From positions 310,001-374,000 of the IMG/VR virus record IMGVR_UViG_3300046665_000548: 64,000 nt of DNA; one strand, given 5' to 3'. Under the pieces are notes generated by a model, which was not told the origin of the DNA, did not search any database, and saw only the letters and a program-made list of their open reading frames with translations. Positions 1,273 through 22,702 of the stretch are shown here, piece after piece. The translations under genes and the position numbers were made by a program. Each line of letters begins with the position of its first letter. Within the stretch, counting starts at the first letter, position 1.

Positions 1273-4200
1273 TTAGGATGTCACTGCGATCAAATGCGGC
1301 GACGGGAACACCATTACCGTGTTGTCACGATTTTCCATATTCAGCATGTTGACGTAGTAATCACCCTGCGGAATGCTGATGTTTAGCGGCCCTTCCTGGA
1401 CCTGCATGGTGTCCGGATATACGAACACGGTCATTTCTGGCTGTGGCCGCCATGCGCGATCCTGAATGGGTGTTCCTAGCGGAAGCTTGCTCAGCCATAT
1501 GCGCAGAGAACCATCTTGATAGGTCTGGCCGAACTTTGGCTTCATACGAAGGATACGCAGCTTTACTGGATCGTCCGTCACCTGGAGGATGAAGCACACC
1601 GCCTGACCGGCCGGGATGTCGTACTGGTTCTTGAGCAGGACCGACTGGCCAACTGGCGTAGCCATATGGAACGGATAGCTCGGTGCCTTTACGGTTGCTG
1701 AAACCTTACCGACAATGCGCGGAGCAAAATCAAGGATGATGTTCGACGCCGTTCCATGGATGTATGGACCGGCGAAGCCATCGCTGGTGAATGGCGCGAG
1801 AAGCTGCTCAACAGTGCTGGTGATGCCAACGCTACCAAACGCATCAATCGTGGCGTGGAGTGTGTTCTGGCCACGTGCACGGATCGGTGCGGGAGAGATC
1901 GCGATAGAGGTGAACGGACCAAACGTCGTAGCCTGTGCGCGGCCCTTAACGATAAGATCGAGGTTGGTGTTCTGAGATGCGCCACCGATTGTGCTCTGAC
2001 CGGAACCAGAGACCGAGGTATGTGGGATCGCAAACGAACCAAACTCGGGAACAGTGCTATTCGCGGTGCCTTCGACGGTAGCCTTGGTCCGGCCGACCGA
2101 CGTGACAGGCAAGATTGCGGCGATACTGGTGACGGAGACCAGCGCGCTGCCGGATGCGTTCTGAACAACCGGACCGATCTTCGCAACACTGAATGCACCG
2201 GCTTTGCGTTCGAGCGTACCCGCACTGGTGAACGGCGCAATCGTATTTGCGCCAGATAGCCGAGCAGCACTGTTAGCGGACGCAAATGACGTGACTGCAA
2301 GGGTCGATGAGCCGGTTGCCGTGGCAACCGCATCGGCAATAACCGTGGTATTGAAGTATCCACTGTTTTGTTCGGCAGAGCCAGCAATGACGGCTTTAAC
2401 GGAACCACTCGACAGGGTTGCCGGGATCGTATCGGACGCAGTACCGCGCAGGATACCGGAGACATCCGTTGTGCTCGTAAACGGCCCAACGCGTGAGGTG
2501 TCGTACGCAACAATCCTTGCCTTGGCAGCGCCAGACGAGGATATAGTCGGAAGTATCTGGTTTGCACTGCCGCCGTTGGCCCCGGTAGCTTGTGCAGCCG
2601 ACGTAACCGGACCAATCGTATTATTGGCAGAACCATCTGCGGTAACGCGGGCGATGGATTCGGAGGCAAATGGCGCGACCGTATTTGCACCCGATGCGCT
2701 GGCCCGGACGTAGGTTGTCGAGATAAACGGCGCAATGGTGATTGCACCGGAAGCACTGACTAGATCGACAGAGAGCCCCGCAGAGGCGAATTCGGCAAAT
2801 GCGGTGGCCGATGTCGCCCTAACTTGGACAGCGCCTTCTGTGACGCTCTGTAGGGCTCCGATGGACACTGTAGCGGTGCCGCTGGCGACCAACCCCAGAA
2901 GACCGGTGGAAGTAAATGCACCAACCGTATTGGTGGCTGCCGCTTTCGCGATACTCGACAGATTGCCATTGCTTGAATAGGCAGAGATCGTGGATGCCGA
3001 AGCACCAATGATCGGCGGGTAACCGCCAACAGCGATTTCCGTGAACGCCGAAATGGTCTGGCTGGCCGTACCACTGATGGATTCAAATATCGGAAGCCCG
3101 TGACCATCGGACAACACCGGCTGCACGGTCTGGGCAACATTAACCGAGACCCTGGCAAATCCTTCCGCAACGGATGTGATGGCGTTGATCGAATGTGTGA
3201 CCGAACCACCGATGACGTTACCAATGGTGGTAAAGCTTTCAAACAAACCGATTGAATTGGTTGCCGCAGCAGCCTTAACCAGAAGCTTGAATTGACCACC
3301 ATTGGTGAACGGCGTAATCGTCTGGGAAACATTAGCGGCATTTCCGCTGACGGAACCACGGCCTTGTGACGCGACGATAACGAAGCTTTGCGAAACCGTA
3401 CTATGGATTGGCGTCGTACCGCTTGCGACGTTTGTGAACGGATCGATTTGAAGCGCAGGAGCAACATCGACGCTCTGATCGATACGGACAGTTTGCGTGA
3501 ATGGAGCGATGTTATTCGCGGCCGAACCAACAATGACAATTTGAGCGCTAGCAACGGTCGCGAACGGATCAATGTTTTCGCTTACTATTGCGTTGACTAG
3601 ACCTGACGAGGTAGCGCTATTGACAAACGGTTCAATCTGGTTCGCAGTCGAACCAAGGTTTTGAACCACACCAAGCGTGACGTTCGAGAATGGCGCGATT
3701 TGCGTGCTAGCAGAAACCGTACCAATAGTCTGACCAGCCGCGACCAGAGCTTCTTGTGGAATGCTTTGATCCGCATACGCCCCAACGATGGCACGAGATG
3801 TGGATGTGCCGGTAATTGGCTCGATCAGTACGCTGAGAGAACCAACATCCAGCGCCTGAACGTTTGTACTCTGGGTGAATACGAACGAGGATGCCGCGCT
3901 GCCTAGAATTCCTACCTTGGCGGCGGACGCGGTGGTGAATTCATCAACGACAGATGTGCCACTCGCGTTACGCGTATTGAAGAGGTAGCCGTTCGAGATG
4001 AACTCGCCCAGGTTCGATGTGCCAATACCGTGGATGTTTTCAACAGTGCCCTCGGCATCAATCGAAAACAGACCAATCGAATTAGTACCAGACGCATTGT
4101 TCGTAACCTTGGCCGCACCATTCGACGCGATGTCAAACGTGGCAGTCGAAGTACCGGTGACGGTTTCCACAGCGACCGCAGCCGAGATAACCGGGCTGAT

Positions 4201-6290: not shown

Positions 6291-6291
6291 G

Positions 6292-6954: not shown

Positions 6955-7076
6955 CTGAACTGGGTTACAATAATATCGATTCCTCCATAAATATTTCCAG
7001 GTGGGATCAGATGAAAATTGACGTTCTAGTAAAAGTCGTGACAGTCGGCCCTCGCCGTATGCGAGAGCGGTAACTC

Positions 7077-10000
7077 ATGGCCATTACAGTATCCCGCTTT
7101 GAAAACTTTATATTCAATTCAAAAGACGCTGACGACAGCACTCTTTTGCGTGACGACCAGGGTTTTCTGCTTGTCGATGACGGTAGTAACCCGCTTCTTG
7201 ACGAAGATGGCAGTTCGTATCCCGTAACTCCTCCGATCAATATCCTGGTCGGGATAGACGACAATCAGATCATCGCTAGTTTTACGAGTTCCGACATTGG
7301 TGCGGTTACCGTAACCGCCTCGTCTACCTCCAGCGTTGGTCAATTCACGAACACGGCCAATAATTATGCCCTCGGGTCCGCGAGCCAAACGGTTGGGGCC
7401 TTCTCGACCACCACGGTTATTTCAGCAATCGCTTCGGCCTCGGGCGCGAACGCAATCGAATCGTTCTCGTCTGCGGGAACTTTGCGCGCTGTTCCATCAT
7501 TGTCGGCCAACCAGACGATCACTGGTTTTAGCGATACGGCAAACGGACTCGTAACGGCATCCGGTTCGGCTTCGCCAACAATCGGGACGTTCATAAGCTC
7601 CGCTATTGAATCAACAATCGTTAGCTCCTCGACCGTATGCCAAATTAACCCGTTTGTTAGCGCCTCGATTGGCTTTGTTAGAGCAACTGGTTCGTCGGCC
7701 TTATCAGTCGCTCCCATAACATCGACATCGGTTGTGTCCGCCGTCGCGACGCTTTCTGGATCGCAGGTTATTGGTGCATTCGTTGACGCCGGAACTGGTC
7801 TGGCAGTTGTCAGTAGTTCAACCGTTTCGGTTATCAGTCCGTTCACGGTAACCGCGAACAGTTTCGCCCGAGTATCATCTAGCACGGCTTCCCAGGTTGG
7901 TGCTGCTACAACTAGTTCGGCTGCGGCAGTAACCGTGGCGGGTTCCGCCGCACAGTCAATGGGCGTGCTTACACCGACCACATCCGTGGCCGTCACCGAC
8001 GCCGCTTCGGTAGCACAAACAATCGCGATATTCACCAATACAGCGAGCGCAGAACGTGTTGTATCTGGATTGGCATCGCAGTCGTTTGCGGCGTTCACAA
8101 ACACGTCGAATGCTTCAACTAAAGTTTCGGTTACTGCATCCCTAACTCTGGAGCCATTTACAGAATCTTCGAGCGGTACCGTTCAAGTATCGGGCGTGAT
8201 CGTTAATTCTAGCGGACCGTTCGCGAGTACGTCTAATGCGTCGAGCACGGTTGCGGCATCCGCCGCACAGTCGTTTGATGCGGCAACCACAATTTCACTT
8301 GCCTCGAATAAAGTATCTATAACGGCCAATCAACTTGTTGCTCCAATTGTAGAAGCAGCAACTAGCGCGACGGTAGTTACCGGTTTGGTCGTGCAGACGG
8401 TTGGGGCGTTTTCGGCCTCTTCAAGTGTGTCCGTCATATCAACAGGTTCCGCCTACCTACCGGCTTCTAATCACACAGATGATGAAGATTTCGCGGGAAT
8501 TGGTCCGTTCAAGAACATCGCGGCGGTTGGCGACACTTTTGTTTCCGGCGTCGCAAACCAGTCCTTCGCGGTCTTCGTAAACAATTCATACGATTCGGTG
8601 TTGGCAAGTGCGTCGGCAACATCTGTTATTGACCCGTTCACGAACACATCTGATGGCGATGTTCGAGTATCAGCAACTGTAGCTCAAATCATCTCGAATG
8701 TTTCGTCTGCATCTACCGTCCGAGGCGTGGTGTCTGTCTCGGCGTCTAATCTGATTACGCCGTTCACGACGACAACAGTCATTAGCGTTATCTCGACTGG
8801 CTCCGCAATCCAAACCATCGAAGGCCACACAAGCACGGGTTCTATTTCTGCCGTAGCTGGTATCGTTTCGACAACATCAGTAGCCCCGATTACTTTGGTA
8901 GCGACCGGCGTTAGCATCGTGTCAGCGACGACCTCAAGCCTTGTTGGGCCGGTATCGTCCGTTACGGCTGGCTCCATCATAGTATCGGGCTCAGCGACAC
9001 AGACTTTCGATAACGTTACTTCAATATCGAACAATTTCTCGCCAATGTCTGGCGATGCCGTCCAGCTTATTGGCCCAGCCACGAGCGCATCAATTACGCT
9101 CAACCTAGTACGATCATCAGTTACGCAAACGTTTGGTGCATTTACGGGTACGGCCTCCTCCTCGGCGCAGGTCAGTAGTTCGAACACTACTACACTTACG
9201 CCCATCATATCGTCGGCGGAAGGTAATGCGCGATACATCGGTTCCGTTGATGTCACTATTGAGGAATTTATTAGCACGGCGGATGGATGTGTTCAACGCG
9301 TTGACGGACTTGCAGATAGCGTTGTTGGCGATTTCATATCAACTGCGATCACGCGCTCCATCAATTCAGCAACCGCAACCCAGACGTTTGACGACTTTAC
9401 CCAAGCATCGGGTGGAAGCCAGGAAATTCGGGTCTGGGGCACGTCAGAGATCAATAACGCATCGTCAAATGCGTTTGGCTTCGCGCAGGTTTCCGGTGTA
9501 TCTGCGGCTCTAATTGGTCCCCTTAGTACGAATGGAGCGGCCAACGCGGTTGTATCAGGAACCCCACTCGGGGTCATCGAACCGTTCTCTGACATAGCAT
9601 CCGTGATGGTGACGGTTTCGTACTCAGGAACCGTCACGATTCCCTCACTGATCAGCACGACTGCGGGTACCGCAACCAATGTCACTTACGGTCAGAGCAC
9701 GATTGGAAACTTTACATCTATCGACGTTGCCGGTCCAATTGTAGTCGCACGACCAGCGACCCAGGCGATAGGCATCTTCACGAACGTTGCAAGCTCGAAG
9801 GCTATCGCTGGTTTGACCGCTGCGACCGTGCTGCAAATCACCTGCGCGGCAAGCGGCACGATTACCGTCTCGGCATCGGTAGATCAAACGCTGCAAGATT
9901 TCGATAACGAGACAAACTATATTCCGACCGGCATGCCGGATATGGTTCTGCCAGATGTAATAAGCTCGGGAAGCGCAAAGACCAGAATATTTGGTTACGG

Positions 10001-10652
10001 GCTCAGTGCCGTGCAGCCATTTTCGACGGATAGCATTGGCTACCGTATAGCTTCGGGAACTGCTAACGGAAGCATCGGACTGCCAACGGGCACGATCTCC
10101 GCTAATGTACCCGTGTCGGGATCAATCACCGATCTTGTCGCACCGCTACTGAGCATCAGTACGGTTAAGGTAGCCATTGTTAGCACACCAATCATCTCTG
10201 ATATTGTGATGCCGGGTGACCGTGCATACGGTTTGTTGGGATCGAAGAAGAAGATCACTCCTCCTCTCTATCCGTACAATATATTCGATACGCCGCCGAT
10301 CAAGCGCACGCGCTATGAGGTTCTTGGCATGGAGGCGGCTTGCTTCGTCATCAAGATGAACAATTTGCCGATGCAATTGAGACTATCGCGCCTGCCGAGT
10401 TTGAATGGTTTCCAGGATAACACGCTACGAGTTTGGATCAGTCGTGCCCCTATGAGTGCGTCAGTAAAGAACGGCGCTCTTTGGTATCTCAACAAGCGCG
10501 GATTGATAGTTAAAGTCCTTCCCTTGAACGTACAAGGGGACCATTTCTCGGTCGAGGTCGGACAAGGGGACTACTTTTTGAACGTCCAAAACCTTGAAGG
10601 GAAGGCAACCCAAATCTTCCTAAATCCCGCGACGACGATAATGACCGCATAA
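7077..10652 (+). CDS. Giant 21-aa-repeat fibre/scaffold protein (1191 aa)
   Basis: 21-aa periodicity; acidic LLxDDG motifs near the N-terminus; shared C-terminal domain (QDNTLRVWIS...GDYFLNVQN). Confidence 0.8.
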   Translation: MAITVSRFENFIFNSKDADDSTLLRDDQGFLLVDDGSNPLLDEDGSSYPVTPPINILVGIDDNQIIASFTSSDIGAVTVTASSTSSVGQFTNTANNYALGSASQTVGAFSTTTVISAIASASGANAIESFSSAGTLRAVPSLSANQTITGFSDTANGLVTASGSASPTIGTFISSAIESTIVSSSTVCQINPFVSASIGFVRATGSSALSVAPITSTSVVSAVATLSGSQVIGAFVDAGTGLAVVSSSTVSVISPFTVTANSFARVSSSTASQVGAATTSSAAAVTVAGSAAQSMGVLTPTTSVAVTDAASVAQTIAIFTNTASAERVVSGLASQSFAAFTNTSNASTKVSVTASLTLEPFTESSSGTVQVSGVIVNSSGPFASTSNASSTVAASAAQSFDAATTISLASNKVSITANQLVAPIVEAATSATVVTGLVVQTVGAFSASSSVSVISTGSAYLPASNHTDDEDFAGIGPFKNIAAVGDTFVSGVANQSFAVFVNNSYDSVLASASATSVIDPFTNTSDGDVRVSATVAQIISNVSSASTVRGVVSVSASNLITPFTTTTVISVISTGSAIQTIEGHTSTGSISAVAGIVSTTSVAPITLVATGVSIVSATTSSLVGPVSSVTAGSIIVSGSATQTFDNVTSISNNFSPMSGDAVQLIGPATSASITLNLVRSSVTQTFGAFTGTASSSAQVSSSNTTTLTPIISSAEGNARYIGSVDVTIEEFISTADGCVQRVDGLADSVVGDFISTAITRSINSATATQTFDDFTQASGGSQEIRVWGTSEINNASSNAFGFAQVSGVSAALIGPLSTNGAANAVVSGTPLGVIEPFSDIASVMVTVSYSGTVTIPSLISTTAGTATNVTYGQSTIGNFTSIDVAGPIVVARPATQAIGIFTNVASSKAIAGLTAATVLQITCAASGTITVSASVDQTLQDFDNETNYIPTGMPDMVLPDVISSGSAKTRIFGYGLSAVQPFSTDSIGYRIASGTANGSIGLPTGTISANVPVSGSITDLVAPLLSISTVKVAIVSTPIISDIVMPGDRAYGLLGSKKKITPPLYPYNIFDTPPIKRTRYEVLGMEAACFVIKMNNLPMQLRLSRLPSLNGFQDNTLRVWISRAPMSASVKNGALWYLNKRGLIVKVLPLNVQGDHFSVEVGQGDYFLNVQNLEGKATQIFLNPATTIMTA

Positions 10653-10714: not shown

Positions 10715-11119
10715 ATGGCACTTCAGTTCGACACTACGCTCCGAAACACGATGCTCGATTCCATCGAGACCTCTATTTCGGCTGGTGGCGCTGGCAAGGT
10801 TCAGATTTGGACCGGTTCAGTTCCCGCCAATTGCGGCGCAGCAAGCACAGGCACGAAGCTTTGGGAGTACACCCTGGCAACCGATTTCATGTCTAGCGCA
10901 TCCGCTGGCTCTAAGGCTTTCAACCCGGTTCCGCTTTCGGCAGCCGCCGTCGCTACCGGTACTGCTGGTTATTTCCGCATCGTGAACAACGGCGGCACTG
11001 CTATTATGCAGGGCACTGTTGCTACCTCGGGCGCTGATCTCAACCTGGACAACACCAGCATCAACTCTGGTCAGACCGTGCAGATCACATCGTGGACCGT
11101 TACCGCTCCTGGCGCGTAA
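10715..11119 (+). CDS. Small virion structural/fibre subunit (134 aa)
   Basis: RN..LD.I...IWTGS.P...ATGTAGYFRI...GTV..SGADLNLDNTSI..GQ.V.ITS pattern common in phage structural proteins; own late promoter (10677), GAGGAG RBS and terminator. Confidence 0.7.
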   Translation: MALQFDTTLRNTMLDSIETSISAGGAGKVQIWTGSVPANCGAASTGTKLWEYTLATDFMSSASAGSKAFNPVPLSAAAVATGTAGYFRIVNNGGTAIMQGTVATSGADLNLDNTSINSGQTVQITSWTVTAPGA

Positions 11120-12933: not shown

Positions 12934-13608
12934 ATGGCCACTACAACTGCTATGTGCTCATCGTTCAAGCAGGAGCTTCTACAGGCCGCTCATTGCTTCA
13001 ACGCTGACGTAACTCTCGCTTCTGCTTCCGGCACCTCTGGTGCATTCGCTGTAACCGTTACTTCAACCGCTGGACTTGCTGTCGGGATGGTTTACGCGTC
13101 GGGCGGAGCAGGATTCGCTGCCGGTTCGGTGGTTTCGGAAATCACCAGTGCTACTACCTTTGTTGTCTCTAAGGCATTGACTGCTACTGCATCGGGTTCG
13201 CCAGTTTTCACTGCTGACGTGATCAAGATGGCACTCGTAAAGACCGGCAACGGCGGCACCTACGGCGCAGCCACAACCAACTACTCACAGCTTACGAGCG
13301 GTTCTGACGAAGTGACCGGTACCGGCTACTCGGCTGGTGGTACCACCCTCGCCAAGTCTACTCCGCAGCTTACGACCACGACTGCATGGCTGACGTTCTC
13401 TCCCGATCCGAACTGGACCTCTGCTACATTCTCGGCAAACGCCGCGCTAATCTACAACACTTCGAGCCGCCTTGGTGCAGCTTCCGGTATCTCCGGTCGC
13501 GCTGTTTCGGTTCATGATTTCGGTGGCACTCAGAACGTGTCGAACGGAACATTCACGGTTGTTATGCCGACCGCGAACTCCACGACCGCTATTCTTCGCA
13601 TCACCTGA
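12934..13608 (+). CDS. Small virion structural/fibre subunit (224 aa)
   Basis: AMCSSFKQELL...KMAL...EVTGTGYSAGG..L...ALIYN...V.DFGG...NGTFTV..P......AILRI; late promoter 12895, GGAGG RBS, terminator. Confidence 0.7.
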   Translation: MATTTAMCSSFKQELLQAAHCFNADVTLASASGTSGAFAVTVTSTAGLAVGMVYASGGAGFAAGSVVSEITSATTFVVSKALTATASGSPVFTADVIKMALVKTGNGGTYGAATTNYSQLTSGSDEVTGTGYSAGGTTLAKSTPQLTTTTAWLTFSPDPNWTSATFSANAALIYNTSSRLGAASGISGRAVSVHDFGGTQNVSNGTFTVVMPTANSTTAILRIT

Positions 13609-13635: not shown

Positions 13636-13666
13636 GGGTGGAGATTTAATCTCCGCCCTTTTTTTT
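13636..13666 (+). terminator. Rho-independent terminator
   Basis: GGGTGGAGAT-TTA-ATCTCCGCCC followed by T8. Confidence 0.8.
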
Positions 13667-13758: not shown

Positions 13759-14187
13759 ATGTCCAAGGGTGATACCTTCGAAAATGATCTGCTTAAGCTG
13801 ATCTTCAACGCTACTGCTATCGCTAATATGGCCGATAACGCAGCAACGTCTCCTCTGACGAATCTTTATGTTGCCCTTCACACCGCTGACCCAGGTGAAT
13901 CAGGAACCCAGTCAACCTCAGAAGCCGCATATACCTCGTACGCACGTGTTGCTGTTGCCCGCACGACCGGTGGTTGGACAGTTACCTCTAACTCGGTTTC
14001 ACCAGCAGCAAATATCGATTTTCCGGCGTGTACCGGTGGTACCTCGACCGTGACCTTCTTCTCAGTTGGTATTGCTTCCTCAGGTGCAACCAAAATTCTC
14101 TACTCTGGCGCGGTATCCCCGTCCATCTCAGTTTCGACCGGCGTGACTCCTCGTTTGACCACAGCGACTGCGATTACAGAAGACTAA
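13759..14187 (+). CDS. Small virion structural/fibre subunit (142 aa)
   Basis: FENDLLKLIFN...LYVALHTADPGE.G.....E..YTSYARVAV.R family of phage fibre proteins; late promoter 13728. Confidence 0.7.
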   Translation: MSKGDTFENDLLKLIFNATAIANMADNAATSPLTNLYVALHTADPGESGTQSTSEAAYTSYARVAVARTTGGWTVTSNSVSPAANIDFPACTGGTSTVTFFSVGIASSGATKILYSGAVSPSISVSTGVTPRLTTATAITED

Positions 14188-14215: not shown

Positions 14216-14245
14216 AAGCCGCTTTAAAATGGCGGCTTTTGTTTT
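14216..14245 (+). terminator. Terminator between small subunit gene and giant fibre gene
   Basis: AAGCCGC...GCGGCTT followed by TTGTTTT. Confidence 0.6.
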
Positions 14246-14260
14246 AGGAGCCACTCGCTC

Positions 14261-17200
14261 GTGACTACATTTGATTCCACCAGGAAAGACTCGGGCATAA
14301 CGCTGTCGAACGGTGATCTCACCGCGTCTAGCGTTACAGATGCTCCTTTGTATGTATTTGGAACAACTGGCAAGAGCACTGGAAAATTCAGCTTCACGGT
14401 ATCTACTCCTAACGGTTTTGATAACAATACATTCAGATTGTATCTTAGTAACCTTCCTTCATCCGGGGCTGCTCCAGCAGCCGGATATCTTGAAATCTAT
14501 CGTTCGGGTTCTGTCTGGGTCATAAACGACACCAATGGTACTAACAATAATTTCGGTGGAAACGCTCCATCATCCAATCCAGACATTCTAACAGTTCACG
14601 TCGATATTACTGCTCGTAAGGTCTACTTCAGTCTTAACGGCGGAGCATATTTCAATAGTGCTGATCCAGTAGCTGGTACTGGAGGATTTTCGATTCCAGG
14701 TACTGGTGATATCTATCCAGCAGCGCGTTTGAGTGCTTCAATATCCGTTAACGTCACTATAAATTTTTTCCCAACGAGTCTTCCATCTGGGTTCAGTTCT
14801 TGGGATGCTCCCAGCATTCAATCAGCCGATGGCACTTCTTCTGGAACTGGTGCTGCCTCTGGTGTAGGCGTAGCTCTAACTGGGACTCGTTTCGATCCAC
14901 TCAAGACAGAAACTGGTCTAACTCTCTCTAATAATGACCTTACTGTTTCGGGAACGGGTGGTGCCGGAAACTACACTTGGAGTACCACTGCCAAAACTAC
15001 TGGAAAATATAGTTTTGAAATTACATCAAGTTATTTCTACACTTCTGATCTTGTCATTTATTTGGATCAGCAATCGGGAGCATCAGCGCAACCGGGTCAG
15101 TTTACTGATGCTGGTGTGCGACTCACTTATCTTGATCCTATCATTCCCGGTTGGGGATGGAACGCTCGTGACACATCTTCAACCAATTTTTTCGATACCT
15201 CGCATCCAATAACAAACGGTTCTACTAATACCGTTCGTGTTCACGTCGATTTTACCGCCAGAAAAATATATTACGAAGTAAACGGTTCGCTTCTATACGG
15301 TGCTGATCCGGTTGCTGGTACCGGTGGTATATCAATGACTACAGTGGGTACACATAAACTGTGTATGGCTGTTAGTATTCAAGCTCATCCATCATCTGCT
15401 ACCGTTAATTTTAATCCAACATCTCTTCCATCTGGTTATACGGGATGGGATTATGTTCACAATTATCAATCAGGTGTCGGCACTGCCGCAGGCGTAGGTA
15501 CGGCAACTGGCAACGGTACAGCAGTCATATTGAGTAGAAGCACTTTCGACTCAGTCAAGACAGATGCTGGTCTTGTTCTCTCAAATGGTAATCGTACCGT
15601 TGCTGGGCCAGGAAATCTTGGCTCTCTCTATACGTGGAGTACAACAAGTAAATCTACCGGCAAATATAGTTTTGCTTTTACATCGAACAATTTTTACAGT
15701 TCTGACGTTCGAATTTGGATAGATGCTCAAGTTGGAACGAACTTACCAAATCAAAATGCGAACGGTGGTGTACGTCTTATTTACATCGATCCTTCGGCTG
15801 GTGGTCAGGGCTGGGGTGTTGTTAGCACGGTTCCTGCGAACACTTACGATGGGTTACATGCCATTTCGGCTAACACGTCATATACTATTCGTGTTCATGC
15901 CGATTTCACGGCTGACCGAGTATATTTCGAATTAAATGGTTCATATCTTTTTGGCGGCGATCCAGTAGCAGGTACTGGTGGCATAGTCATGAGTCCGGCT
16001 GCCGTCCAAAAAATATGTATAATGGTAGACGCGGTTGGCCCAAATCCTACTGGTGGATCAATTGACTTTGCTCCAACATCACTCCCTTCTGGATTTACTG
16101 CATGGGATGAAACACTTGGCACATCTGCTGGTACGTCAACGGCATCCGCTGTTGGTGCCGTAGCACCGCGTGGTGATGCCGCTGGCACGTCAACCGTATC
16201 TGGAGTCGGCGTCGCCTATCGACCCACACTTAAATTCTCTGCTGCGAACTCAGCAACCGCAACGACCGTAAGTATTCCGACTCACGAAGTCGGTGACTTG
16301 ATCGTGATCTACGCGATGCGTGAGAACGCTACGCCGCCAACACTTGCATCTGGCTTCACGAGCATCACGACTAACACTACAACGTTATTTGGCAGCATCT
16401 TAGGCTATCGTATTGCCACGGCCACTAATACAACATCCGGTACATGGACGAACGCACAAGAACTTATAGTCCATGTCTACAAACCACGAACCGGTGGTGC
16501 TATTCGTATCGGCAGCAGCGTTGTTGCGGTCGGTACCAGCACAACCCTGTCATGGTCTGCATTGACTCCACAGCGCACCAATAGCACGTCGTGGATTGCT
16601 GCATTCGGCGGTCATCGTTCCATTAACACGACATTGGAATCGCCACCTACCGGAATGGTCCTGCGAAATAATCTGGTAGATTCGCTCGCAGAAGTAGCCA
16701 GCTTCGATACGAATGGTGCTGTCAATTCGTTTGCCCTGTCAACAAAGACACCGGGCGGTACTGCTTCTGGTTGGGGTACAATCGTTGTTGAAATTCAAGA
16801 CCTTGCACAAATCATGCAAGGCAGTGCTTCTGGCGCAGGTTCAGCAACAGCAGTAGGTAACGCTGTAGGCATCATAACTGGTGTAGGTAATGCAACTGGC
16901 AATTCTACTGTAACTGCTTCTCCTAATATCTCTCGTCGCGTAACCTCATTCCCTGGAACGAACCCTGCATCATTCAATGGAGTAGCAACCAATAGTGATG
17001 GTTCGATCATGTATGCTGCACCATACAATGATTGTATTCTAAAGTCAGTCAATTACGGCGTTACATGGACTCAGCTTGCCGGTACATCGAATTTTTGGCA
17101 GGGCGTTGCTACATCTCATAGTGGCCAAGTTGTTGCAGCAATGGTACCCGGTGGAAGCATCTGGGTATCAACCGATTATGGTGCATCATGGACTGAAGCA

Positions 17201-20200
17201 ACATCTGCTGGCTCACATTACTGGCTTTCAATTGAAGTATCTGGCGATGGATCAACTATCATCGCTGGTGATGCTGATACAGGTGGCCGTGTATATGTAT
17301 CACACAACTCAGGTACGACGTTCACTGCTGTTGCAGGCTCGCATCCATGGCTTGGAGTTGCTTCATCATCTACCGGCTCTGTACTATATGCAGTCGGGGA
17401 TACGGGCAACTACGTTCAGAAATCGACAAATGGTGGTACGAGTTGGTCTTCACTGACAGCAGGACCAACCGGCTGGAATGGCGTCGATTGCTCTAGCGAC
17501 GGTCAGACAGTCGTTATCATCGGGTCAGGTAATGCGGCTAAGGTATCGACAAATGGCGGTACCTCGTGGGCTGATTGCCCAACTAGCGGTTCATTCAATA
17601 ACTGGAGCAACATCAGTGTATCCGACACTGGCCAATATATCGTACTTGCTGATAATACCGACTATATCTGGTTCTCTAGCAATTACGGTACTTCGTTTGT
17701 CAAGCAGAATCAGCCAGGATTCGGTCAACGTATTTGGATATCTGTGGACATCTCTTCAGATGGACAGTGGATCATTGCTGGCGAGTATGATGATGGTAGT
17801 GGCAAGGGCCAGATATATGTAATCAACTACTCTCGTCCCGTCTACGCATCTGGTTCTGGCACATCTAGCGGTATTGGCACAGCGGCTGCCGTTGGTAAAC
17901 CAATGTCGATTGGTCCGGCAGTTGTCTATGGCGCGACACTTGCCACCAACGATACGAACGTTAATATGTCGTTTCGCGTTGTTGCTACAGTTGTTGAAGC
18001 ATCAGATGGGCATCTTCGCATAACTTTTCAGTCTGGTTCAGGAGGTACCCTCGGTATTTCTCATGCCTCATTTGGCAAGTGGGATACTAATACTGGCTCA
18101 GCGGATACAACGGGAACACCTATCAAACTGACGTTTGGCGGGGCTGATACGTTCCAGATGAGCGGAACGGTTACCTCTGATTACGTCAATCACTCAGCAT
18201 CGTTCTCGCTCGTTCCTGGCGAAAAGATCGTCGTCATTTACGATACCACTTCATTTGGCGATGAACGCTATAGTGGTTCACTATCGGGTGTTGAAACGTG
18301 GTTCAAGGTTGGTACTTCATGGAGTACCCCGAACGTAACCGGATTCACAAAGCTTGCAGCGACCAACTATTCCGTTATAGCAATTGAATCAGTTAAGAGC
18401 TTTGAAATTCTACCATACGCTGGACCTACAGTTCGTTCAGTATCTAACACTGCGTATGTTAGTACGAGCAGCTTAGTTCTTAACAAGCCTACGGGAACCG
18501 TAGATGGCGATATTATGATCGCTCATACGTTTTCTGGCGTTGATTTCTATAACGACGGAACGTTCACTGCACCAGCAGGATGGACGTTGCTGACTGGTTT
18601 TCCGACAGCGGTAGACGTAAGTAACTTCTACGGTAAAATGTTTGTGTACTGGAAGCGAGCTTCTAGTGAAGGAAGCTCATACACCTTTACACAGAATAGA
18701 GACTTTTATACTCAGGGTGAAATCATCACGATCCAGGGCGCTGTTGCATCTGGTGATCCGATTGATGTTATCGGAATAGCTACAGGTCTTAGCCAGACAA
18801 GTGTCGTTAGCTCGGTCACCACTTCTGCTGATAACGAACTCGTATTGTATTTGTCGCACGACTGGGAAGGTAATGGAGCATTATCTCCTCCCGCTGGCTT
18901 TACTGAGATTTTAGACGGTCTTATCTATTCAGCATCTCGCCAACTTTCATACGCTTCAGCAACGGGTTCCGTAGCACAAGTTAACGGTAATCTCGGCGCA
19001 GGTGCTCCATTCGCCGCGTCTCTAATCGCGATTGAACCAGCCATCGCCAGTGTATCTGCTAACATCACCGTATCAGGCATCGTTGCCAACAGCGCGGTGG
19101 GCTCTCCGACACAAATCGGAATCAGTTATACCGCTGTCTCTGGAGTTACGGCTGGAACAGCGATTTCGGCACCGACAACGCAAGGCACGGCTAATAAGAG
19201 CATAACTGGCGTCTCTGCTGCCACACAAATTGGCACGGTTTCGACTATCGGCAGCGCTAACAAGGCACTGTCTGGTGTTTCGGCATCGAGCGCTGTCGGC
19301 GTTGCCACTGACAGGACGACAAGCAACGTAGCAGTTTCGGGCGTAGCAGGATCGTCTGTAATAAGCAGCGTGACTACTATTGGCCGCGCAGTTGTCTCTG
19401 CTTCTGGTGTGCAGGCATCAACGGCGGTCGGGATTGTCGCTAAAATTGGCAATGCAAACATCCTTGCGCCATCTACGACCGGTACGGGTCAGGTGGGAGG
19501 AACAGTTAATTCTGGCACGTCAAATGTAGCGCTGTCCGGAGTAAGCGCCGCATCGGCAATTGGCACGACAACAAACATTGGAAATGGAAACGTCCTTGCG
19601 ACCTCGGCGTCCGGCTCCGCTGATGTTGGAGTCGCTACCGGGGTTGGGACGACCACAGCTAGCATTGTAATTTCAGGAGTTTCTGGAACAGCAACTGCAA
19701 ACGCTGCTACAATTGGCTCAACGAACAACATTTCACTGTCGGGTGCTTCCGCAGCGACCTCCGTTGGAAGCACCACTGAGAGTGGTTCTAACAACGTCAA
19801 TATCTCCAGCACGACCGCATCAACCTTCGTCGGTTCTCCAAATGTGGGCGGGCAATCGGCTGCGGTAAGTGGGGGCGTTTCGGCGTCAACGTCATCTGGC
19901 ACGACATCCATCTCCAGCAGCGCTAATGTGCCTATTTCTGGGGCTAACGCGGCCGGTGCGGTTGGATCGCCTACGAAAATCGGATCGGCAAATGTTGCGA
20001 TTACATCAGTATCCGCCAGTGGTCAGGCCCAAACGCTTACCGGTATCGGTTCGGTTCAAATCGCCGCTACTGGTGTTCAAGGCGCAACAAGTAGTGGATC
20101 GCCAACTGTTTCGGGTGAAGCGTTTGTAGCGATTTCCGGTGCCTCGGCTAGCGTTGTTGCACAATCAAATACGGTAACGACGACTGCATCTGCGACGGTG

Positions 20201-22702
20201 ATCGGTGTTGTCGCCGGAACGTCTGCGGGCACAACTAACAAGACGACCACTTCCTTTACATCCGTCAACGGCGTCACGGCATCCATAAACGCAGGACAGC
20301 CTGCCAATATCGGCAACGCTTCGGCGGCAATCGTGGGCGTCTCTGGTAGCAGCGCGGCTTCGCCAGTCATAGTTGCCTCAGCGATCAATACCGGAGCGTC
20401 TGTCGTCGGTGTTAGTGGCACCGGAAGTACGGGCGCGACCACCGTCAGCACACAATCATCTGCTTCTATCGCGGGTATTCAAGGAAATGGTGTAGCTGGG
20501 TCTCCTAATGCGACTGGCTTTGCTATCACGCCTGTCGTCGGCGTATCCTCCAGTGCAGTCAGTGGTACTACTACTGAGAGCGGATCAGCTAACGTTCAAA
20601 TCACGGGAGCCTCGGCTAATGCTCTTTCAGGAGCGCTTACCGAGACAGGTTCTAGCTATGTCAATCTGACTGGTGTTTCGGCATCCGGCGTCAGCAGAAC
20701 AACAAGCGTTACGGGATCATCGAGCATTGGCATCACTGGTGTCCAAACAAGCTCTTCGGTTGGAACCACAACAGAGACATTTTCCGCCAACGTATCGCTC
20801 ACGAGCGCGAGCGCACAGGGTCTTGTTGGAACTACGGAACAAGCCGCAGGAACTGTTTTCAGACTCGAAGATGGCGTTGTAGCAAATGGTCAGGCTGGAT
20901 TGCCATCCGTCATTGGTCACGGAACGATTACTATCAACGGTGCATCTGCTACCGCGTATACCGGCACAACAGGAGAAATTACGGCGTCTTCGGCATCGGT
21001 CGCGGGCGTTGCAACGACTGGTATCGCTGGTTCTGTCGGTATCGTCGGCCGAGCCGTCGTTGATCTTCAGGGCGCAAGCGCAACTGCCCAAACTAGCAAC
21101 GCTCCAGTCAGCGTCACGTCATTCACTTCGATCTCGGGTGAGAGCGCAACTGCCCAGATCGGTATTGTTACTATCGGAAATATCGGAATTACGCTTGTCG
21201 ATCCACAGGGGGTAAACGCCTCGGGTAATGTTGGCGTGACGATTCCTTCCATCACGTCTAGCACGAATATTTCCGGCACAAGTGCTTCGACCCAGGTAGG
21301 AATCACAGATCAAAAGGTTTATGCCAACGTATCTCTATTGGGTACGTCAGCATCGTCGTCCGTTGGAAACGTGATCCCAGCGATACAGACCACTCTAACG
21401 GGCGTTTCATCCTCTGGTCAGGTTGGAACTTCTACTGTATCGAGTTCGTCCGCCGCATCGATCCTTGGTGTTCAGAGCGCTGGCGCGGTTCGTCCAATCA
21501 CTGGGGTTGGTAGCTTCAACACTACGATCTCTGGAGTCGAAGCAAACGGCTCGACAAATGATCTAGTCGTTCTCAGTACGGCGAATAGCACCATTGTCGG
21601 GGCCAGCGCCGCAGGTCTTGTTACTGGCCCGACCGTCACCGGCAACGCAGCTACAAACGTCTCTGGGGTCTCCGCAGCAGCTTCGGCGGGCATTGCAGCG
21701 TCTCGCGCCAACACATCGGTGGTAGCGGATGGCGTCCAGGCCACAGTTATTGCCGGTTCGCCTATAGAAAACGGCGATGCGAACGTACTGGCATTGGGAG
21801 TAGCCGCGAACTCACTCGTTGGTAATTCAGATGTAAATGGCGACACGTGGGTTTCGCTCACAGGTATCTCGGCTTCTGGCCAGATCAATTCAACCTCGGT
21901 TCGGGCCGATGCGGATAGCATCATTTCTGGCGTAAGTGGTTCCGGTCAAGTATCTGACGCGACCATTAATTCCGCAACGTACGCTGATATATTTGGAGTA
22001 TCCGCACAGACTGATACGGAAAACCTCACCGCAAGGCGAGACGCCATCGCGGTTCCCATCCAGGGCGTAGCGGGTGGCGGCACTGTTTCAAACGTATCAC
22101 CGGCTATCGCCAAGCTGGTTTCTGGTGTCGTGGCGACGGGTGTTGCAGATGCCGTCTACGCAGGACGAACCAGCAATAGTTCGATTGGCAACTTTGGCTC
22201 ATCCGCTGCTGGAAAGTCCAATACCCGCCCCGGTATGCACCGGTATGTTCAAAATGCCAGACCATATTATGACCATCTGAAGCCTCGTTTGCCGCGCTAT
22301 CGCATTCCGGCATCGCAGATGGTCGTGATGGAGTTTGTCGTTCCGACAGGCGGAAAAACCAAGCTGTTTCTGGTTCACACCGGCAAGGCACAGGACTATT
22401 CCGCTCAGGCATGGATCAGCGCGGAACCAGACGGGCGGCCGGTAACGTCAACGACCAATATGAGCGAAAAATGGTTTCCTAACCGGCGTGCGATCAATCC
22501 TGTCATAGTTTTTGATCAAGCCATTTCGACCCCTCATGGATTGACTGTCGGACTGCCCCCAGGACGCTATTTTCTCAATATTCTCAACGTCTCCAACGAA
22601 CCAAATGAGGTTGGTTTTTGGTTAGAAACTGGTATTGTGGTTCTTAGCGGGGCATCAGCCGGAACCGCCGTAGGACAGACATTTCAGTTGACCATTTCGT
22701 AA
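14261..22702 (+). CDS. Giant multidomain fibre/adhesin (2813 aa): 3 SPRY/ConA-like domains, BNR-repeat beta-propeller, 22-aa-repeat stalk, shared C-terminal domain
   Basis: Three copies of FD..K..G.TLSN.D.T...TGKYSF...DPVAGTGG...PTSLPSG..W; Asp-box-like S.(D/N).G.(S/T)W repeats; (S/T)GV.A....G every 22 aa from about 19050 to 22190. Confidence 0.85.
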   Translation: MTTFDSTRKDSGITLSNGDLTASSVTDAPLYVFGTTGKSTGKFSFTVSTPNGFDNNTFRLYLSNLPSSGAAPAAGYLEIYRSGSVWVINDTNGTNNNFGGNAPSSNPDILTVHVDITARKVYFSLNGGAYFNSADPVAGTGGFSIPGTGDIYPAARLSASISVNVTINFFPTSLPSGFSSWDAPSIQSADGTSSGTGAASGVGVALTGTRFDPLKTETGLTLSNNDLTVSGTGGAGNYTWSTTAKTTGKYSFEITSSYFYTSDLVIYLDQQSGASAQPGQFTDAGVRLTYLDPIIPGWGWNARDTSSTNFFDTSHPITNGSTNTVRVHVDFTARKIYYEVNGSLLYGADPVAGTGGISMTTVGTHKLCMAVSIQAHPSSATVNFNPTSLPSGYTGWDYVHNYQSGVGTAAGVGTATGNGTAVILSRSTFDSVKTDAGLVLSNGNRTVAGPGNLGSLYTWSTTSKSTGKYSFAFTSNNFYSSDVRIWIDAQVGTNLPNQNANGGVRLIYIDPSAGGQGWGVVSTVPANTYDGLHAISANTSYTIRVHADFTADRVYFELNGSYLFGGDPVAGTGGIVMSPAAVQKICIMVDAVGPNPTGGSIDFAPTSLPSGFTAWDETLGTSAGTSTASAVGAVAPRGDAAGTSTVSGVGVAYRPTLKFSAANSATATTVSIPTHEVGDLIVIYAMRENATPPTLASGFTSITTNTTTLFGSILGYRIATATNTTSGTWTNAQELIVHVYKPRTGGAIRIGSSVVAVGTSTTLSWSALTPQRTNSTSWIAAFGGHRSINTTLESPPTGMVLRNNLVDSLAEVASFDTNGAVNSFALSTKTPGGTASGWGTIVVEIQDLAQIMQGSASGAGSATAVGNAVGIITGVGNATGNSTVTASPNISRRVTSFPGTNPASFNGVATNSDGSIMYAAPYNDCILKSVNYGVTWTQLAGTSNFWQGVATSHSGQVVAAMVPGGSIWVSTDYGASWTEATSAGSHYWLSIEVSGDGSTIIAGDADTGGRVYVSHNSGTTFTAVAGSHPWLGVASSSTGSVLYAVGDTGNYVQKSTNGGTSWSSLTAGPTGWNGVDCSSDGQTVVIIGSGNAAKVSTNGGTSWADCPTSGSFNNWSNISVSDTGQYIVLADNTDYIWFSSNYGTSFVKQNQPGFGQRIWISVDISSDGQWIIAGEYDDGSGKGQIYVINYSRPVYASGSGTSSGIGTAAAVGKPMSIGPAVVYGATLATNDTNVNMSFRVVATVVEASDGHLRITFQSGSGGTLGISHASFGKWDTNTGSADTTGTPIKLTFGGADTFQMSGTVTSDYVNHSASFSLVPGEKIVVIYDTTSFGDERYSGSLSGVETWFKVGTSWSTPNVTGFTKLAATNYSVIAIESVKSFEILPYAGPTVRSVSNTAYVSTSSLVLNKPTGTVDGDIMIAHTFSGVDFYNDGTFTAPAGWTLLTGFPTAVDVSNFYGKMFVYWKRASSEGSSYTFTQNRDFYTQGEIITIQGAVASGDPIDVIGIATGLSQTSVVSSVTTSADNELVLYLSHDWEGNGALSPPAGFTEILDGLIYSASRQLSYASATGSVAQVNGNLGAGAPFAASLIAIEPAIASVSANITVSGIVANSAVGSPTQIGISYTAVSGVTAGTAISAPTTQGTANKSITGVSAATQIGTVSTIGSANKALSGVSASSAVGVATDRTTSNVAVSGVAGSSVISSVTTIGRAVVSASGVQASTAVGIVAKIGNANILAPSTTGTGQVGGTVNSGTSNVALSGVSAASAIGTTTNIGNGNVLATSASGSADVGVATGVGTTTASIVISGVSGTATANAATIGSTNNISLSGASAATSVGSTTESGSNNVNISSTTASTFVGSPNVGGQSAAVSGGVSASTSSGTTSISSSANVPISGANAAGAVGSPTKIGSANVAITSVSASGQAQTLTGIGSVQIAATGVQGATSSGSPTVSGEAFVAISGASASVVAQSNTVTTTASATVIGVVAGTSAGTTNKTTTSFTSVNGVTASINAGQPANIGNASAAIVGVSGSSAASPVIVASAINTGASVVGVSGTGSTGATTVSTQSSASIAGIQGNGVAGSPNATGFAITPVVGVSSSAVSGTTTESGSANVQITGASANALSGALTETGSSYVNLTGVSASGVSRTTSVTGSSSIGITGVQTSSSVGTTTETFSANVSLTSASAQGLVGTTEQAAGTVFRLEDGVVANGQAGLPSVIGHGTITINGASATAYTGTTGEITASSASVAGVATTGIAGSVGIVGRAVVDLQGASATAQTSNAPVSVTSFTSISGESATAQIGIVTIGNIGITLVDPQGVNASGNVGVTIPSITSSTNISGTSASTQVGITDQKVYANVSLLGTSASSSVGNVIPAIQTTLTGVSSSGQVGTSTVSSSSAASILGVQSAGAVRPITGVGSFNTTISGVEANGSTNDLVVLSTANSTIVGASAAGLVTGPTVTGNAATNVSGVSAAASAGIAASRANTSVVADGVQATVIAGSPIENGDANVLALGVAANSLVGNSDVNGDTWVSLTGISASGQINSTSVRADADSIISGVSGSGQVSDATINSATYADIFGVSAQTDTENLTARRDAIAVPIQGVAGGGTVSNVSPAIAKLVSGVVATGVADAVYAGRTSNSSIGNFGSSAAGKSNTRPGMHRYVQNARPYYDHLKPRLPRYRIPASQMVVMEFVVPTGGKTKLFLVHTGKAQDYSAQAWISAEPDGRPVTSTTNMSEKWFPNRRAINPVIVFDQAISTPHGLTVGLPPGRYFLNILNVSNEPNEVGFWLETGIVVLSGASAGTAVGQTFQLTIS

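What the first reader, a model, noticed from the sequence alone, without database searches (positions are those of the whole stretch)
1273..22702. Possible ruler-plus-subunit fibre system: three giant periodic proteins and three small subunits
Seen: the 1406-aa and 1191-aa proteins have a strict 21-aa period. The 2813-aa protein has a 22-aa (S/T)GV.A....G stalk plus short G.(S/A).G...A..VG linkers between its N-terminal domains. That makes three repeat types next to three small structural genes (134, 224, 142 aa). Each small gene has its own late promoter, RBS and terminator, while the 2813-aa gene lies behind a terminator, implying many subunits per long chain. Inference: each repeat donates a beta-strand to one cognate subunit, so the long proteins act as tape measures for long fibres displaying lectin and propeller domains.
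Basis: partly seen in the sequence, partly recalled or inferred. Interest (0 to 1): 0.65.

Follow-up and report, generated by a model that had tools for sequence, protein, structure and literature searches.

The report
Giant bead-on-a-rope phage fibres
A 608-kb phage encodes three very long 'rope' proteins made of about 50 short repeats each, next to three small 'bead' proteins related to the beads of solved phage chain-like fibres, so it probably builds fibres of a known kind that are several times longer than any solved so far.

Summary
Proteins of 1406 and 1191 aa have a 21-aa period, and the 2813-aa protein has a 22-aa stalk plus five short Gly/Ser/Thr/Ala linkers. Three small genes with terminators sit beside them.

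There, dimers of a ~140-aa protein are strung on a rope protein by beta-sheet augmentation, about 21 aa per dimer.
- The 142-aa protein is a Pfam Gp80 member.
- The 134-aa protein matches A1002 fibre I (PDB 44NX) by sequence.
- The 224-aa protein has the gp80 fold plus an inserted barrel.

A co-fold of two 134-aa copies with two 21-aa repeats passed (0.80 against 0.02 for the best control). A 61%-identical bead gene lies beside a 1021-aa rope of the same repeat type and end domain in an unrelated contig.

Main caveat: AlphaFold2 folds the 21-aa repeats alone into a beta-solenoid (pLDDT 79), a known artefact class for repeats but also the real rival.

Assigning the 224-aa bead to the stalk and the 142-aa bead to the linkers is tentative. 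Where the fibres attach to the virion is unknown.

This is a new, extreme variant of a known kind.

The parts
1273..5493 (-). Rope A gene, 1406 aa. It has an N-terminal cap motif, about 46-59 repeats of 21 aa (aa 22-1256, nt 1726-5430) and a C-terminal ~140-aa domain (aa 1262-1406, nt 1276-1710).
   Evidence: C-terminal domain shared with the other two ropes. N-terminal cap shared with ropes of loci L006 and L013.
7077..10652 (+). Rope B gene, 1191 aa. It has an acidic N-terminus, about 39-46 repeats of 21 aa (aa 63 to about 1040, nt 7263-10196) and the shared C-terminal domain (aa 1052-1191, nt 10230-10649).
   Evidence: Residues 326-349 dock a 134-aa dimer in the co-fold. The collection holds it as an 897-aa protein, probably a short start call.
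10715..11119 (+). Bead 1, 134 aa. Homologue of A1002 fibre I gp40 and the phage 7-7-1 'structural protein' (garland). Proposed bead of ropes A and B.
   Evidence: phrog_3758, 2e-33. PDB 44nx_B 7e-8 and 9rkv_A 2.6e-5. Co-fold pass. 61% identical homologue beside rope P0009.
11147..11167 (+). Terminator-like hairpin after the 134-aa gene (9-bp stem, T-run).
12934..13608 (+). Bead 2, 224 aa. gp80-like core with a ~70-aa beta-barrel inserted at aa 25-93. Tentatively the bead of the 22-aa stalk of rope C.
   Evidence: phrog_644. AF2 pLDDT 93.3. 8jou_a Z 8.4, rmsd 3.0, 115 of 136 residues aligned. Motif cross-hits.
13636..13658 (+). Terminator-like hairpin after the 224-aa gene (10-bp stem, T8).
13759..14187 (+). 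Bead 3, 142 aa. Pfam Gp80 family (GP4 fibre I). Tentatively the bead of the linkers of rope C.
   Evidence: PF23140 4.3e-16, 59.9 bits against a cut-off of 27. 8jou_a 4e-4. 223 relatives in viral contigs. Motif cross-hits.
14216..14245 (+). Hairpin (7-bp stem, 9-nt loop) plus T-rich tail between the 142-aa gene and rope C. An AGGAG follows at 14246-14250.
   Evidence: Read. The scanner missed it because the loop exceeds 8 nt.
14261..22702 (+). Rope C gene, 2813 aa. The head region (aa 1-1598) has three tandem ~200-aa modules, a six-Asp-box propeller-like stretch and other modules, separated by five linkers. The stalk is about 47 repeats of 22 aa (aa 1599-2650, nt 19055-22210). The shared C-terminal domain is aa 2655-2796 (nt 22223-22648).
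6987..6993 (+). ATAAATA motif upstream of rope B. Further copies at 10676, 12894 and 13727 lie upstream of the 134-, 224- and 142-aa genes, and one at 12386 lies upstream of a 155-aa gene.
   Evidence: 13 found against 4 expected, 0 of 100 shuffles reach 13. Function not shown.

Best explanation
The locus encodes three chain-like ('beads on a rope') virion fibres of the kind solved in podophages GP4, VP1 and A1002, greatly enlarged.

How it is proposed to work:
1. Each giant protein is a rope that is extended when assembled.
2. Each 21- or 22-aa repeat is one docking site.
3. At each site a homodimer of a small gp80-fold bead clamps the rope by adding rope strands to the edge of its beta-sheets.
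4. The rope therefore fixes the number and order of beads, and so the fibre length. At the A1002 rise of about 27 A per dimer this gives roughly 160 nm for rope A, 125 nm for rope B, and 130 nm plus a head region for rope C.

Proposed pairings:
- Ropes A and B carry one repeat type and are coated by the 134-aa bead.
- Rope C probably carries two bead types: the 224-aa bead on its 22-aa stalk and the 142-aa Gp80 bead on the single sites that separate its globular head modules.

Orientation and expression:
- The ~140-aa C-terminal domain shared by all three ropes is inferred to be the common anchor to the virion. The N-termini are inferred to be distal.
- Terminators after each bead gene, and the lack of a promoter-like motif before rope C, fit a need for about 100 beads per rope.

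Shown here: the periodicity, bead homology and fold, synteny, and an in-silico docking pass.
Inferred: dimer stoichiometry on every site, the two rope C pairings, orientation, attachment site and function in adsorption.
For: 1. Beads.
- The 142-aa protein is Pfam Gp80 (4.3e-16, above cut-off) and matches 8JOU chain a.
- The 134-aa protein matches 44NX_B, A1002 fibre I (7e-8), and 9RKV_A.
- The 224-aa model (pLDDT 93) aligns to 8jou_a at Z 8.4 over 115 of 136 residues.

2. Spacing. The main A1002 fibre-dock segment, residues 243-468, carries most of its 11 dimers. That is about 21 aa and 27 A per dimer, the same as the period here.

3. Co-fold of 2 x 134 aa with rope B 316-360.
- ipSAE 0.80 (runs 0.78, 0.81, 0.80); best of 3 controls 0.02.
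- The mark was reached by 51 of 78 solved complexes and 2 of 108 mismatched pairs.
- Runs agree in at least 94% of contacts; partner pLDDT is at least 66.
- One 24-residue stretch (326-349) touches both copies, through the bead's invariant C-terminal Q-T-V-Q-I-T-S-W strand.

4. Synteny.
- A periodic ORF lies directly downstream of the bead gene in 3/9, 18/57 and 18/54 related loci. Upstream the counts are 0/10, 4/45 and 0/51.
- In contig L178, a 133-aa protein 61% identical to the 134-aa bead sits just before a 1021-aa rope. That rope has the same 21-aa motif and the same C-terminal domain.
- The window's 21-mer HMMs hit ORFs only in 134-family loci: 3/12 against 0/160.

5. Rope C pairings. 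Repeat HMMs built from foreign ropes beside 224-family genes hit only the rope C stalk (27 bits; shuffled 0.1). Those from ropes beside 142-family genes hit only the rope C linkers (z = 6).

6. Genome content. The genome has exactly one copy of each bead family, and the C-terminal domain occurs only in the three ropes.

7. Terminators.
Against: - AlphaFold2 folds ten 21-aa repeats of rope B alone, with paralogous segments as the alignment, into a three-stranded-per-coil beta-solenoid (pLDDT 79, pTM 0.75). A period of 21-22 residues is also a typical beta-helix coil length.
- The ropes have no sequence match to any solved chain, including the GP4 and A1002 ropes.
- The three bead families show no profile-profile similarity to each other.
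- The co-fold may score from memory of 8JOU-like complexes, and its calibration was on pairs of single chains.
- The stalk-HMM preference for 224-family loci is weak (4/80 against 1/80). Most genes downstream of 224-family beads carry other repeat types (13-, 17-aa, collagen-like).
- There is no expression, proteomic or imaging data.
- The attachment site is unknown. The C-terminal domain has no Pfam, PHROG or PDB assignment.
Confidence: 0.75

Rival explanations
1. The repeats fold on their own into single-chain beta-solenoid rods (one 21/22-aa coil per repeat, about 4.8 A rise, so 25-30 nm rods). The small gp80-fold proteins then bind elsewhere, for example only at the linkers, at rod ends, or on another virion part.
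For: - AF2 model of rope B 99-308 alone: pLDDT 79, pTM 0.75, three strands per repeat.
- The repeat has hydrophobic or small residues at alternating positions, with conserved Gly and Pro where turns would fall.
- Several periodic proteins beside bead genes in other phages are plainly autonomous fibre repeats (17-aa, collagen-like).
Against: - AF2 is documented to give confident but unrealistic beta-solenoids for repeat sequences (PMC11795689).
- The model matches no solved beta-helix (best TM 0.42, no E <= 0.001).
- Conservation is concentrated in one contiguous stretch (positions 5-12, Q-T-I-x-P-F-T-S), including both faces of the strand. That fits a clamped peptide better than a solenoid wall.
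- The co-fold pass places this stretch at the dimer centre.
- The period equals the A1002 docking spacing.
- On this reading the single-copy, separately terminated 134-aa bead gene would have no rope in the genome.
Confidence: 0.15
2. The bead-on-rope assembly is as described, but the fibres are head (capsid or neck) fibres or a surface coat rather than tail fibres used for adsorption.
For: - PHROG labels the 142- and 134-aa families 'head protein' and 'head and packaging'.
- The GP4 fibre docks onto the capsid.
- In many 224-family loci the bead gene follows a ~356-aa gene that may be a capsid protein (not verified).
- No tail or baseplate gene was recognised next to the locus.
Against: - In all solved cases the rope is rooted in the tail: nozzle in A1002, fibre-tail adaptor in GP4, baseplate garland in 7-7-1.
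- PHROG categories for these families are automatic labels.
Confidence: 0.3
3. The giant ORFs are non-functional low-complexity frames or assembly artefacts.
For: - Ser/Thr/Ala/Gly-rich sequence.
- No Pfam or PHROG hit for the giants.
- The source is a metagenome-derived record.
Against: - The frames stay open for 1191-2813 codons.
- A conserved globular C-terminal domain has 140 relatives at E <= 1e-3.
- Independent homologues have the same architecture (P0009).
- The gene layout is ordered, with RBS and terminators.
Confidence: 0.02

Closest known systems
Chain-like fibre of Pseudomonas podophage A1002: nozzle-rope gp39 plus fibre dimers gp40 and gp41 (PDB 44NX/44NY; PMC13730344)
   Same: - The 134-aa bead matches gp40 by sequence (7e-8).
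- The rope gene lies directly beside the bead genes.
- About 21 aa of rope per dimer.
- Two different bead proteins on one rope, as proposed here for rope C.
- Beta-sheet augmentation between dimer and rope.
   Different: - A1002 has 11 sites on a 620-aa rope that is itself part of the tail nozzle. Here there are about 47-59 sites per rope and three ropes of 1191-2813 aa.
- There is no detectable similarity to the nozzle platform or propeller. A different ~140-aa C-terminal domain takes that position.
- Rope C alternates globular modules with single sites.
- The host virus is a 608-kb phage, not a podophage of ordinary genome size.
Fibre I of Ralstonia podophage GP4: gp80 dimers on a separately encoded rope protein (PDB 8JOU; Pfam PF23140)
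   Same: - The 142-aa protein is a Pfam Gp80 member.
- The 224-aa core has the same fold (Z 8.4).
- The rope is a separate gene next to the bead gene.
   Different: - GP4 strings five dimers.
- The window's 224-aa bead carries an extra inserted beta-barrel.
- There is no sequence similarity between the ropes.
Garland of homodimeric gp014 around the baseplate of Agrobacterium myophage 7-7-1 (PDB 9RKV; PMC12796354)
   Same: The 134-aa bead matches the 141-aa 9RKV chain, taken here to be gp014 (2.6e-5). It is a small all-beta homodimer present in many copies (36 dimers).
   Different: No rope protein is described there, and the garland is a ring at the baseplate rather than a long fibre.
Bead-chain-like neck fibre of Anabaena myophage A-1(L) (PMC10966104)
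   Same: A flexible beaded fibre of about 100 nm built from many copies of a small protein.
   Different: The beads are trimers joined head to tail, without a rope. No homology was found here. It resembles this system in appearance only.

Membership tests
Chain-like (rope plus gp80-fold dimer) phage fibre, GP4/VP1/A1002 type | Small (~130-170 aa) all-beta bead protein of the gp80 / gp40 family or fold | tested here: met
   - 142 aa: PF23140 4.3e-16, 59.9 bits against cut-off 27; 8jou_a 4e-4.
- 134 aa: 44nx_B 7e-8.
- 224 aa: fold match to 8jou_a, Z 8.4, rmsd 3.0, 115 aligned.
Chain-like (rope plus gp80-fold dimer) phage fibre, GP4/VP1/A1002 type | Rope protein with tandem docking sites, about 21-24 residues per dimer | tested here: met
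   Periods of 21, 21 and 22 aa with z of 19-25 over shuffles. A1002 fibre-dock 243-468 for about 11 dimers. No sequence similarity to solved ropes, which is not required among known members.
Chain-like (rope plus gp80-fold dimer) phage fibre, GP4/VP1/A1002 type | Bead dimer clamps the rope by beta-sheet augmentation | tested here: met
   Prediction only. Co-fold score 0.80, best control 0.02. The mark was reached by 51 of 78 solved complexes and 2 of 108 mismatched pairs. At least 94% of contacts agree; partner pLDDT at least 66. Both copies contact rope 326-349 through their C-terminal strands. Tested for the 134-aa bead with rope B only.
Chain-like (rope plus gp80-fold dimer) phage fibre, GP4/VP1/A1002 type | Bead and rope genes adjacent and co-inherited | tested here: met
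   Window layout. Lacusarx and Itty13. Related loci. L178.
Chain-like (rope plus gp80-fold dimer) phage fibre, GP4/VP1/A1002 type | Rope rooted in the tail (nozzle or fibre-tail adaptor) and present in virions | not testable with these tools
   The C-terminal domain has no Pfam, PHROG or PDB assignment. Neighbouring genes are uninformative. There are no virions or proteomics for this metagenomic phage.
Autonomous beta-solenoid fibre | Repeats fold alone into a stable beta-helix | tested here: inconclusive
   AF2 predicts a solenoid at pLDDT 79. AF2 over-predicts this fold for repeats (PMC11795689), and the model matches no solved beta-helix.
Tail tape-measure protein | Long, mostly alpha-helical protein with tape-measure family signatures inside a tail gene module | tested here: not met
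   No Pfam or PHROG tape-measure hit. The repeats are predicted all-beta. No tail module was recognised around them.

The most novel reading that the evidence does not exclude
The repeat sequence may act as an address code that decides which bead sits where, making a programmable heteropolymeric fibre.
- One bead type would coat about 105 sites on two plain ropes.
- The third rope would be a 'charm bracelet'. Single Gp80-type sites would space out lectin-like, propeller-like and other binding modules, and a 47-site stalk would carry a second bead bearing an extra barrel domain.
- The fibres would be over 100 nm long and five times longer than any solved chain-like fibre.
- All three would plug into the virion through a new ~140-aa anchor domain that also exists as a free-standing protein in many phages.
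Probability: 0.35. Interest if true: 0.7.

Novelty: new variant of a known kind. Interest (0 to 1): 0.58.

Why it matters
Chain-like fibres were first solved in 2023-2026, and only in podophages, with 3-11 beads.

This locus suggests three extensions of the principle:
- It scales to about 50-60 beads per rope.
- It can use several bead types on sequence-addressed sites.
- It is used by a megaphage, a group whose virion appendages are almost unknown.

It also offers a simple sequence signature for annotating many 'hypothetical' periodic phage proteins as ropes rather than enzymes or beta-helices. The signature is a gp80-fold bead gene next to a 20-22-aa periodic Ser/Thr/Ala/Gly-rich ORF.

The system is directly testable with recombinant proteins, and it may be of use as a length-programmable protein scaffold.

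Tried and rejected
- Megablast of 12 kb against phage records: no match.
- Pfam and PHROG on the three giants: nothing except a sub-threshold BNR hit.
- PDB sequence searches with ropes A and B, the rope C head region and the Itty13 rope: no real hit.
- Profile-profile comparison among the three bead families: no signal, so their kinship rests on fold and on separate PDB/Pfam hits.
- Foldseek of the 224-aa model: nothing at E <= 0.001. The gp80 match appeared only with the exhaustive aligner.
- 224-family profile against PDB sequences: nothing.
- C-terminal domain:
  - The word search found only itself.
  - The Atlas gave only a sub-0.9 lead to PPC.
  - Pfam, PHROG and PDB profile searches gave nothing solid.
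  - I therefore spent the single large profile search on it. It showed a family of mostly free-standing ~130-aa proteins.
- HMM from 134-family foreign ropes L014/L015: it did not discriminate between ropes.
- Huge phage LR756502: its giant neighbour of the Gp80-like gene is collagen-like, not a rope. Only a short 257-aa rope-like ORF is present, so giant ropes are not a general megaphage trait.
- A-1(L) bead-chain neck fibre: a different principle, trimers without a rope.
- Tape-measure reading: rejected (see membership test).
- Not used: read-mapping tools.
- Only one co-fold job was available, so the 224/stalk and 142/linker pairs were not co-folded.
Full report
**Source and observation.** The window is bases 310001-374000 of a 607,744-bp IMG/VR virus record rated complete. 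It is therefore a very large phage. It has no close DNA relative among deposited phages.

**Periodicity.** Residue-identity autocorrelation peaks at lags 21/42/63 for A and B and at 22/44/66 for C. Against composition-preserving shuffles the periodicity statistic has z = 25, 19 and 20. Two flanking ORFs give z near 0. An iterated repeat HMM gave these counts:
- 46 clear repeats in A, spanning aa 22-1256.
- 39 clear repeats in B, spanning aa 63-931 and continuing by eye to about 1040. 32 of 38 spacings are exactly 21.
- About 46 repeats of 22 aa in C, aa 1599-2627.

A and B share one consensus, G-[ST]-A-x-Q-T-I-x-P-F-T-S, then G..V.V. The C stalk consensus centres on [IVL]-[ST]-G-V-S-A...G.

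**Head region of rope C.** It holds three tandem homologous ~200-aa modules (38-41% identity, E 2e-33 and 5e-29). It also has six Asp-box motifs about 42 aa apart and five short Gly/Ser/Thr/Ala linkers. All three ropes end in a homologous ~140-aa domain.

**What the small proteins are.**
- The 142-aa protein is a member of Pfam PF23140, 'Podophage GP4 fiber I protein gp80' (4.3e-16, 59.9 bits, cut-off 27). It matches chain a of PDB 8JOU.
- The 134-aa protein matches chain B of PDB 44NX (7e-8) and chain A of 9RKV (2.6e-5). 44NX_B is fibre I gp40 of Pseudomonas phage A1002. 9RKV holds the tail-fibre and garland region of Agrobacterium phage 7-7-1.
- The 224-aa protein has no sequence hit in the PDB. 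With a 45-sequence alignment it folds at pLDDT 93.3. An exhaustive structural comparison aligns its core to 8jou_a at Z 8.4, rmsd 3.0 A, over 115 of 136 residues. Residues 25-93 form a separate small beta-barrel of a kind common in phage decoration and tail proteins.

Profile-profile comparison does not link the three families to each other. The A1002 authors report the same for gp40 and gp41: 16% identity but the same fold.

**The known architecture.** In GP4, VP1 and A1002 a 'chain-like fibre' is made of homodimers of such small proteins strung on a rope (PMC13730344). Each dimer forms an augmented beta-sheet with the rope. A1002 has 11 dimers of two protein types, mostly on residues 243-468 of the 620-aa nozzle-rope gp39, over about 300 A. 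That is about 21 residues and 27 A per dimer. GP4 has five dimers on a separately encoded rope. The 21-22-aa period of the window's giants equals this docking spacing.

**Direct test.** The single co-fold job took two copies of the 134-aa protein and residues 316-360 of rope B, just over two repeats.
- It scored 0.80 (runs 0.78, 0.81, 0.80), against 0.02 for the best of three controls.
- The mark was reached by 51 of 78 solved complexes and 2 of 108 mismatched pairs.
- The runs agree in at least 94% of contacts, and the partner's pLDDT is at least 66.
- One stretch of 24 rope residues (326-349) contacts both copies. Copy 1 pairs with 329-333 and copy 2 with 342-346.
- Both copies use residues 108-113 and 120-133, which include the family's invariant Q-T-V-Q-I-T-S-W strand.
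- The conserved Q-x-I/F-x-x-F core of the repeat lies between the two copies.

This supports one dimer per repeat. It is a model's confidence, not a measurement, and it may partly reflect memory of 8JOU-like complexes.

**Co-occurrence.**
- In Sphingobium phage Lacusarx and Pseudomonas phage Itty13, the Gp80-like gene is followed at once by a periodic protein. In Lacusarx that protein has a lectin-like N-terminus.
- Across 172 related viral loci, an ORF with significant 14-30-aa periodicity lies directly downstream of the bead gene in 3/9 (134 family), 18/57 (142 family) and 18/54 (224 family) cases. Upstream the counts are 0/10, 4/45 and 0/51.
- The strongest single case is a 99-kb sediment contig, L178. 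A 133-aa protein 61% identical to the 134-aa bead (5e-52) sits just before a 1021-aa protein. That protein has a 21-aa period (z = 13.8), the same Q-x-I-x-P-F motif and the same C-terminal domain.
- The window's 21-mer HMMs find at least three repeats only in ORFs of 134-family loci: L006, L007 and L013, so 3/12 against 0/160.
- Ropes in L006 and L013 also share rope A's N-terminal L-G-x-R-P-L-G cap.

**Rope C pairings.** The evidence here is thinner.
- Ropes beside 142-family genes carry 20-aa repeats with an A-G-T-S-T-A-x-A-x-G type motif. An HMM built from them hits only the rope C head linkers (z = 6).
- An HMM of the 22-aa repeats beside two 224-family genes (L149, L145) hits only the rope C stalk (27 bits; shuffled 0.1).
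- The reverse scan is weak: 4/80 against 1/80.
- Most genes downstream of 224-family beads carry other repeat types.

I therefore treat '224 on the stalk, 142 on the linkers' as the best guess, at about even odds.

**Gene expression layout.**
- Terminator-like hairpins with T-runs follow the 134-, 224- and 142-aa genes. The last one lies between the 142-aa gene and the AGGAG-GTG start of rope C.
- An ATAAATA motif, which from my own knowledge resembles the T4 late promoter TATAAATA, is three times over-represented in the window.
- It lies 32-90 nt upstream of rope B, the three bead genes and one 155-aa gene.

This fits a need for roughly 100 beads per rope. Promoter function is not shown.

**The main rival.** A period of 21-22 residues is also a typical beta-helix coil. 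AlphaFold2, given ten repeats of rope B with eight paralogous segments as the alignment, returns a three-strand-per-coil solenoid at pLDDT 79 and pTM 0.75. Four points weaken it:
- AF2 is documented to give confident but unrealistic beta-solenoids for repeats (PMC11795689).
- The model resembles no solved beta-helix (best TM 0.42, no E <= 0.001).
- Conservation is concentrated in a contiguous eight-residue stretch covering both strand faces.
- Without ropes A and B, the single-copy 134-aa bead would have no rope in this genome.

I put the rope model at about 0.75 and the autonomous solenoid at about 0.15.

**The C-terminal domain.**
- A profile of the three copies finds 140 relatives at E <= 1e-3 among 1.84 billion representatives. 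Most are free-standing proteins of 120-150 aa.
- A few sit at the C-terminus of long periodic proteins with LamG-type heads: P0009, P0053 and P0127.
- It has no Pfam, PHROG or PDB assignment. There are only faint hints of a PPC-like jelly roll.
- All three ropes share it while their N-termini differ, and in A1002 the rope's N-terminus is distal. I therefore infer it is the common virion anchor. This is inference only.

**Novelty and limits.** The principle is known, while the scale and composition are not.
- Solved fibres have 3-11 beads. These ropes offer about 47-59 sites each.
- The longest rope-like relatives seen here have about 25-40 sites: L026 (779 aa) and P0009 (1021 aa).
- Another huge phage, LR756502, has only a short rope beside its Gp80-like gene.
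- This was not a systematic survey.
- Nothing here shows expression, assembly or a role in adsorption.

Noticed in passing
window 7077-10652: The public protein collection holds rope B as an 897-aa protein starting at an internal Met (P0006). The 21-aa repeats continue in frame for another ~230 residues upstream, and an ATAAATA motif precedes the ATG at 7077. The 1191-aa reading is probably the right one.
   Followed up: partly
window 22630-22699 (rope C aa 2790-2813): After the C-terminal globular domain, rope C ends with one more copy of the 22-mer core (V-L-S-G-A-S-A-G-T...). It may be a last docking site beyond the anchor domain.
   Followed up: no
window 4609-4677 (rope A aa 273-295) and 7077-7260 (rope B aa 1-60); also P0009 N-terminus: Short, strongly acidic L-L-x-D-E-D-G-like segments interrupt or precede the repeats in ropes A and B and in the homologous rope P0009. 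Their function is unknown.
   Followed up: no
L013 11690-14989, L005 9456-11087 (Lacusarx), L006 11306-12037: Ropes beside bead genes in other phages end not in the 140-aa domain but in three or four short E-D-R-containing repeats. This suggests a second, interchangeable type of rope anchor.
   Followed up: no
genome G000:C1:219535-222150 (outside the window): An 871-aa protein with about ten 46-aa tail-fibre repeats and a C-terminal segment that looks, from memory, like an endosialidase-type intramolecular chaperone. It is an ordinary trimeric tail fibre elsewhere in the genome. The genome's largest ORF (3670 aa, 421287-432299, minus strand) was not examined.
   Followed up: partly
window 7364-8104 (-), 1689-2756 (-) and similar: Long ORFs listed in other frames or on the opposite strand inside the rope genes are shadows of the repeats (one scores z = 10.7 for period 21). 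They should not be annotated as genes.
   Followed up: partly
window 11174-11848 (-), 11922-12389 (+), 12424-12891 (+), 5589-6954 (+): Five genes interleaved with the fibre genes have no clear role. One matches phrog_30528 (unknown). A 155-aa protein matches phrog_16075. A second 155-aa protein has no hit but has its own ATAAATA motif. A 233-aa protein has no hit. A 241-aa protein has a weak kinase-like PHROG hit (4.9e-8). Any of them could be assembly factors.
   Followed up: partly
L098-L177 (224-family loci): Most relatives of the 224-aa bead are 145-aa proteins that lack the inserted barrel. In many marine contigs they sit between a ~356-aa gene and a fibre gene with 13-aa T-A-A-E-L-N-I-L-D-G-V-T repeats. 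The window's version is an enlarged form.
   Followed up: partly
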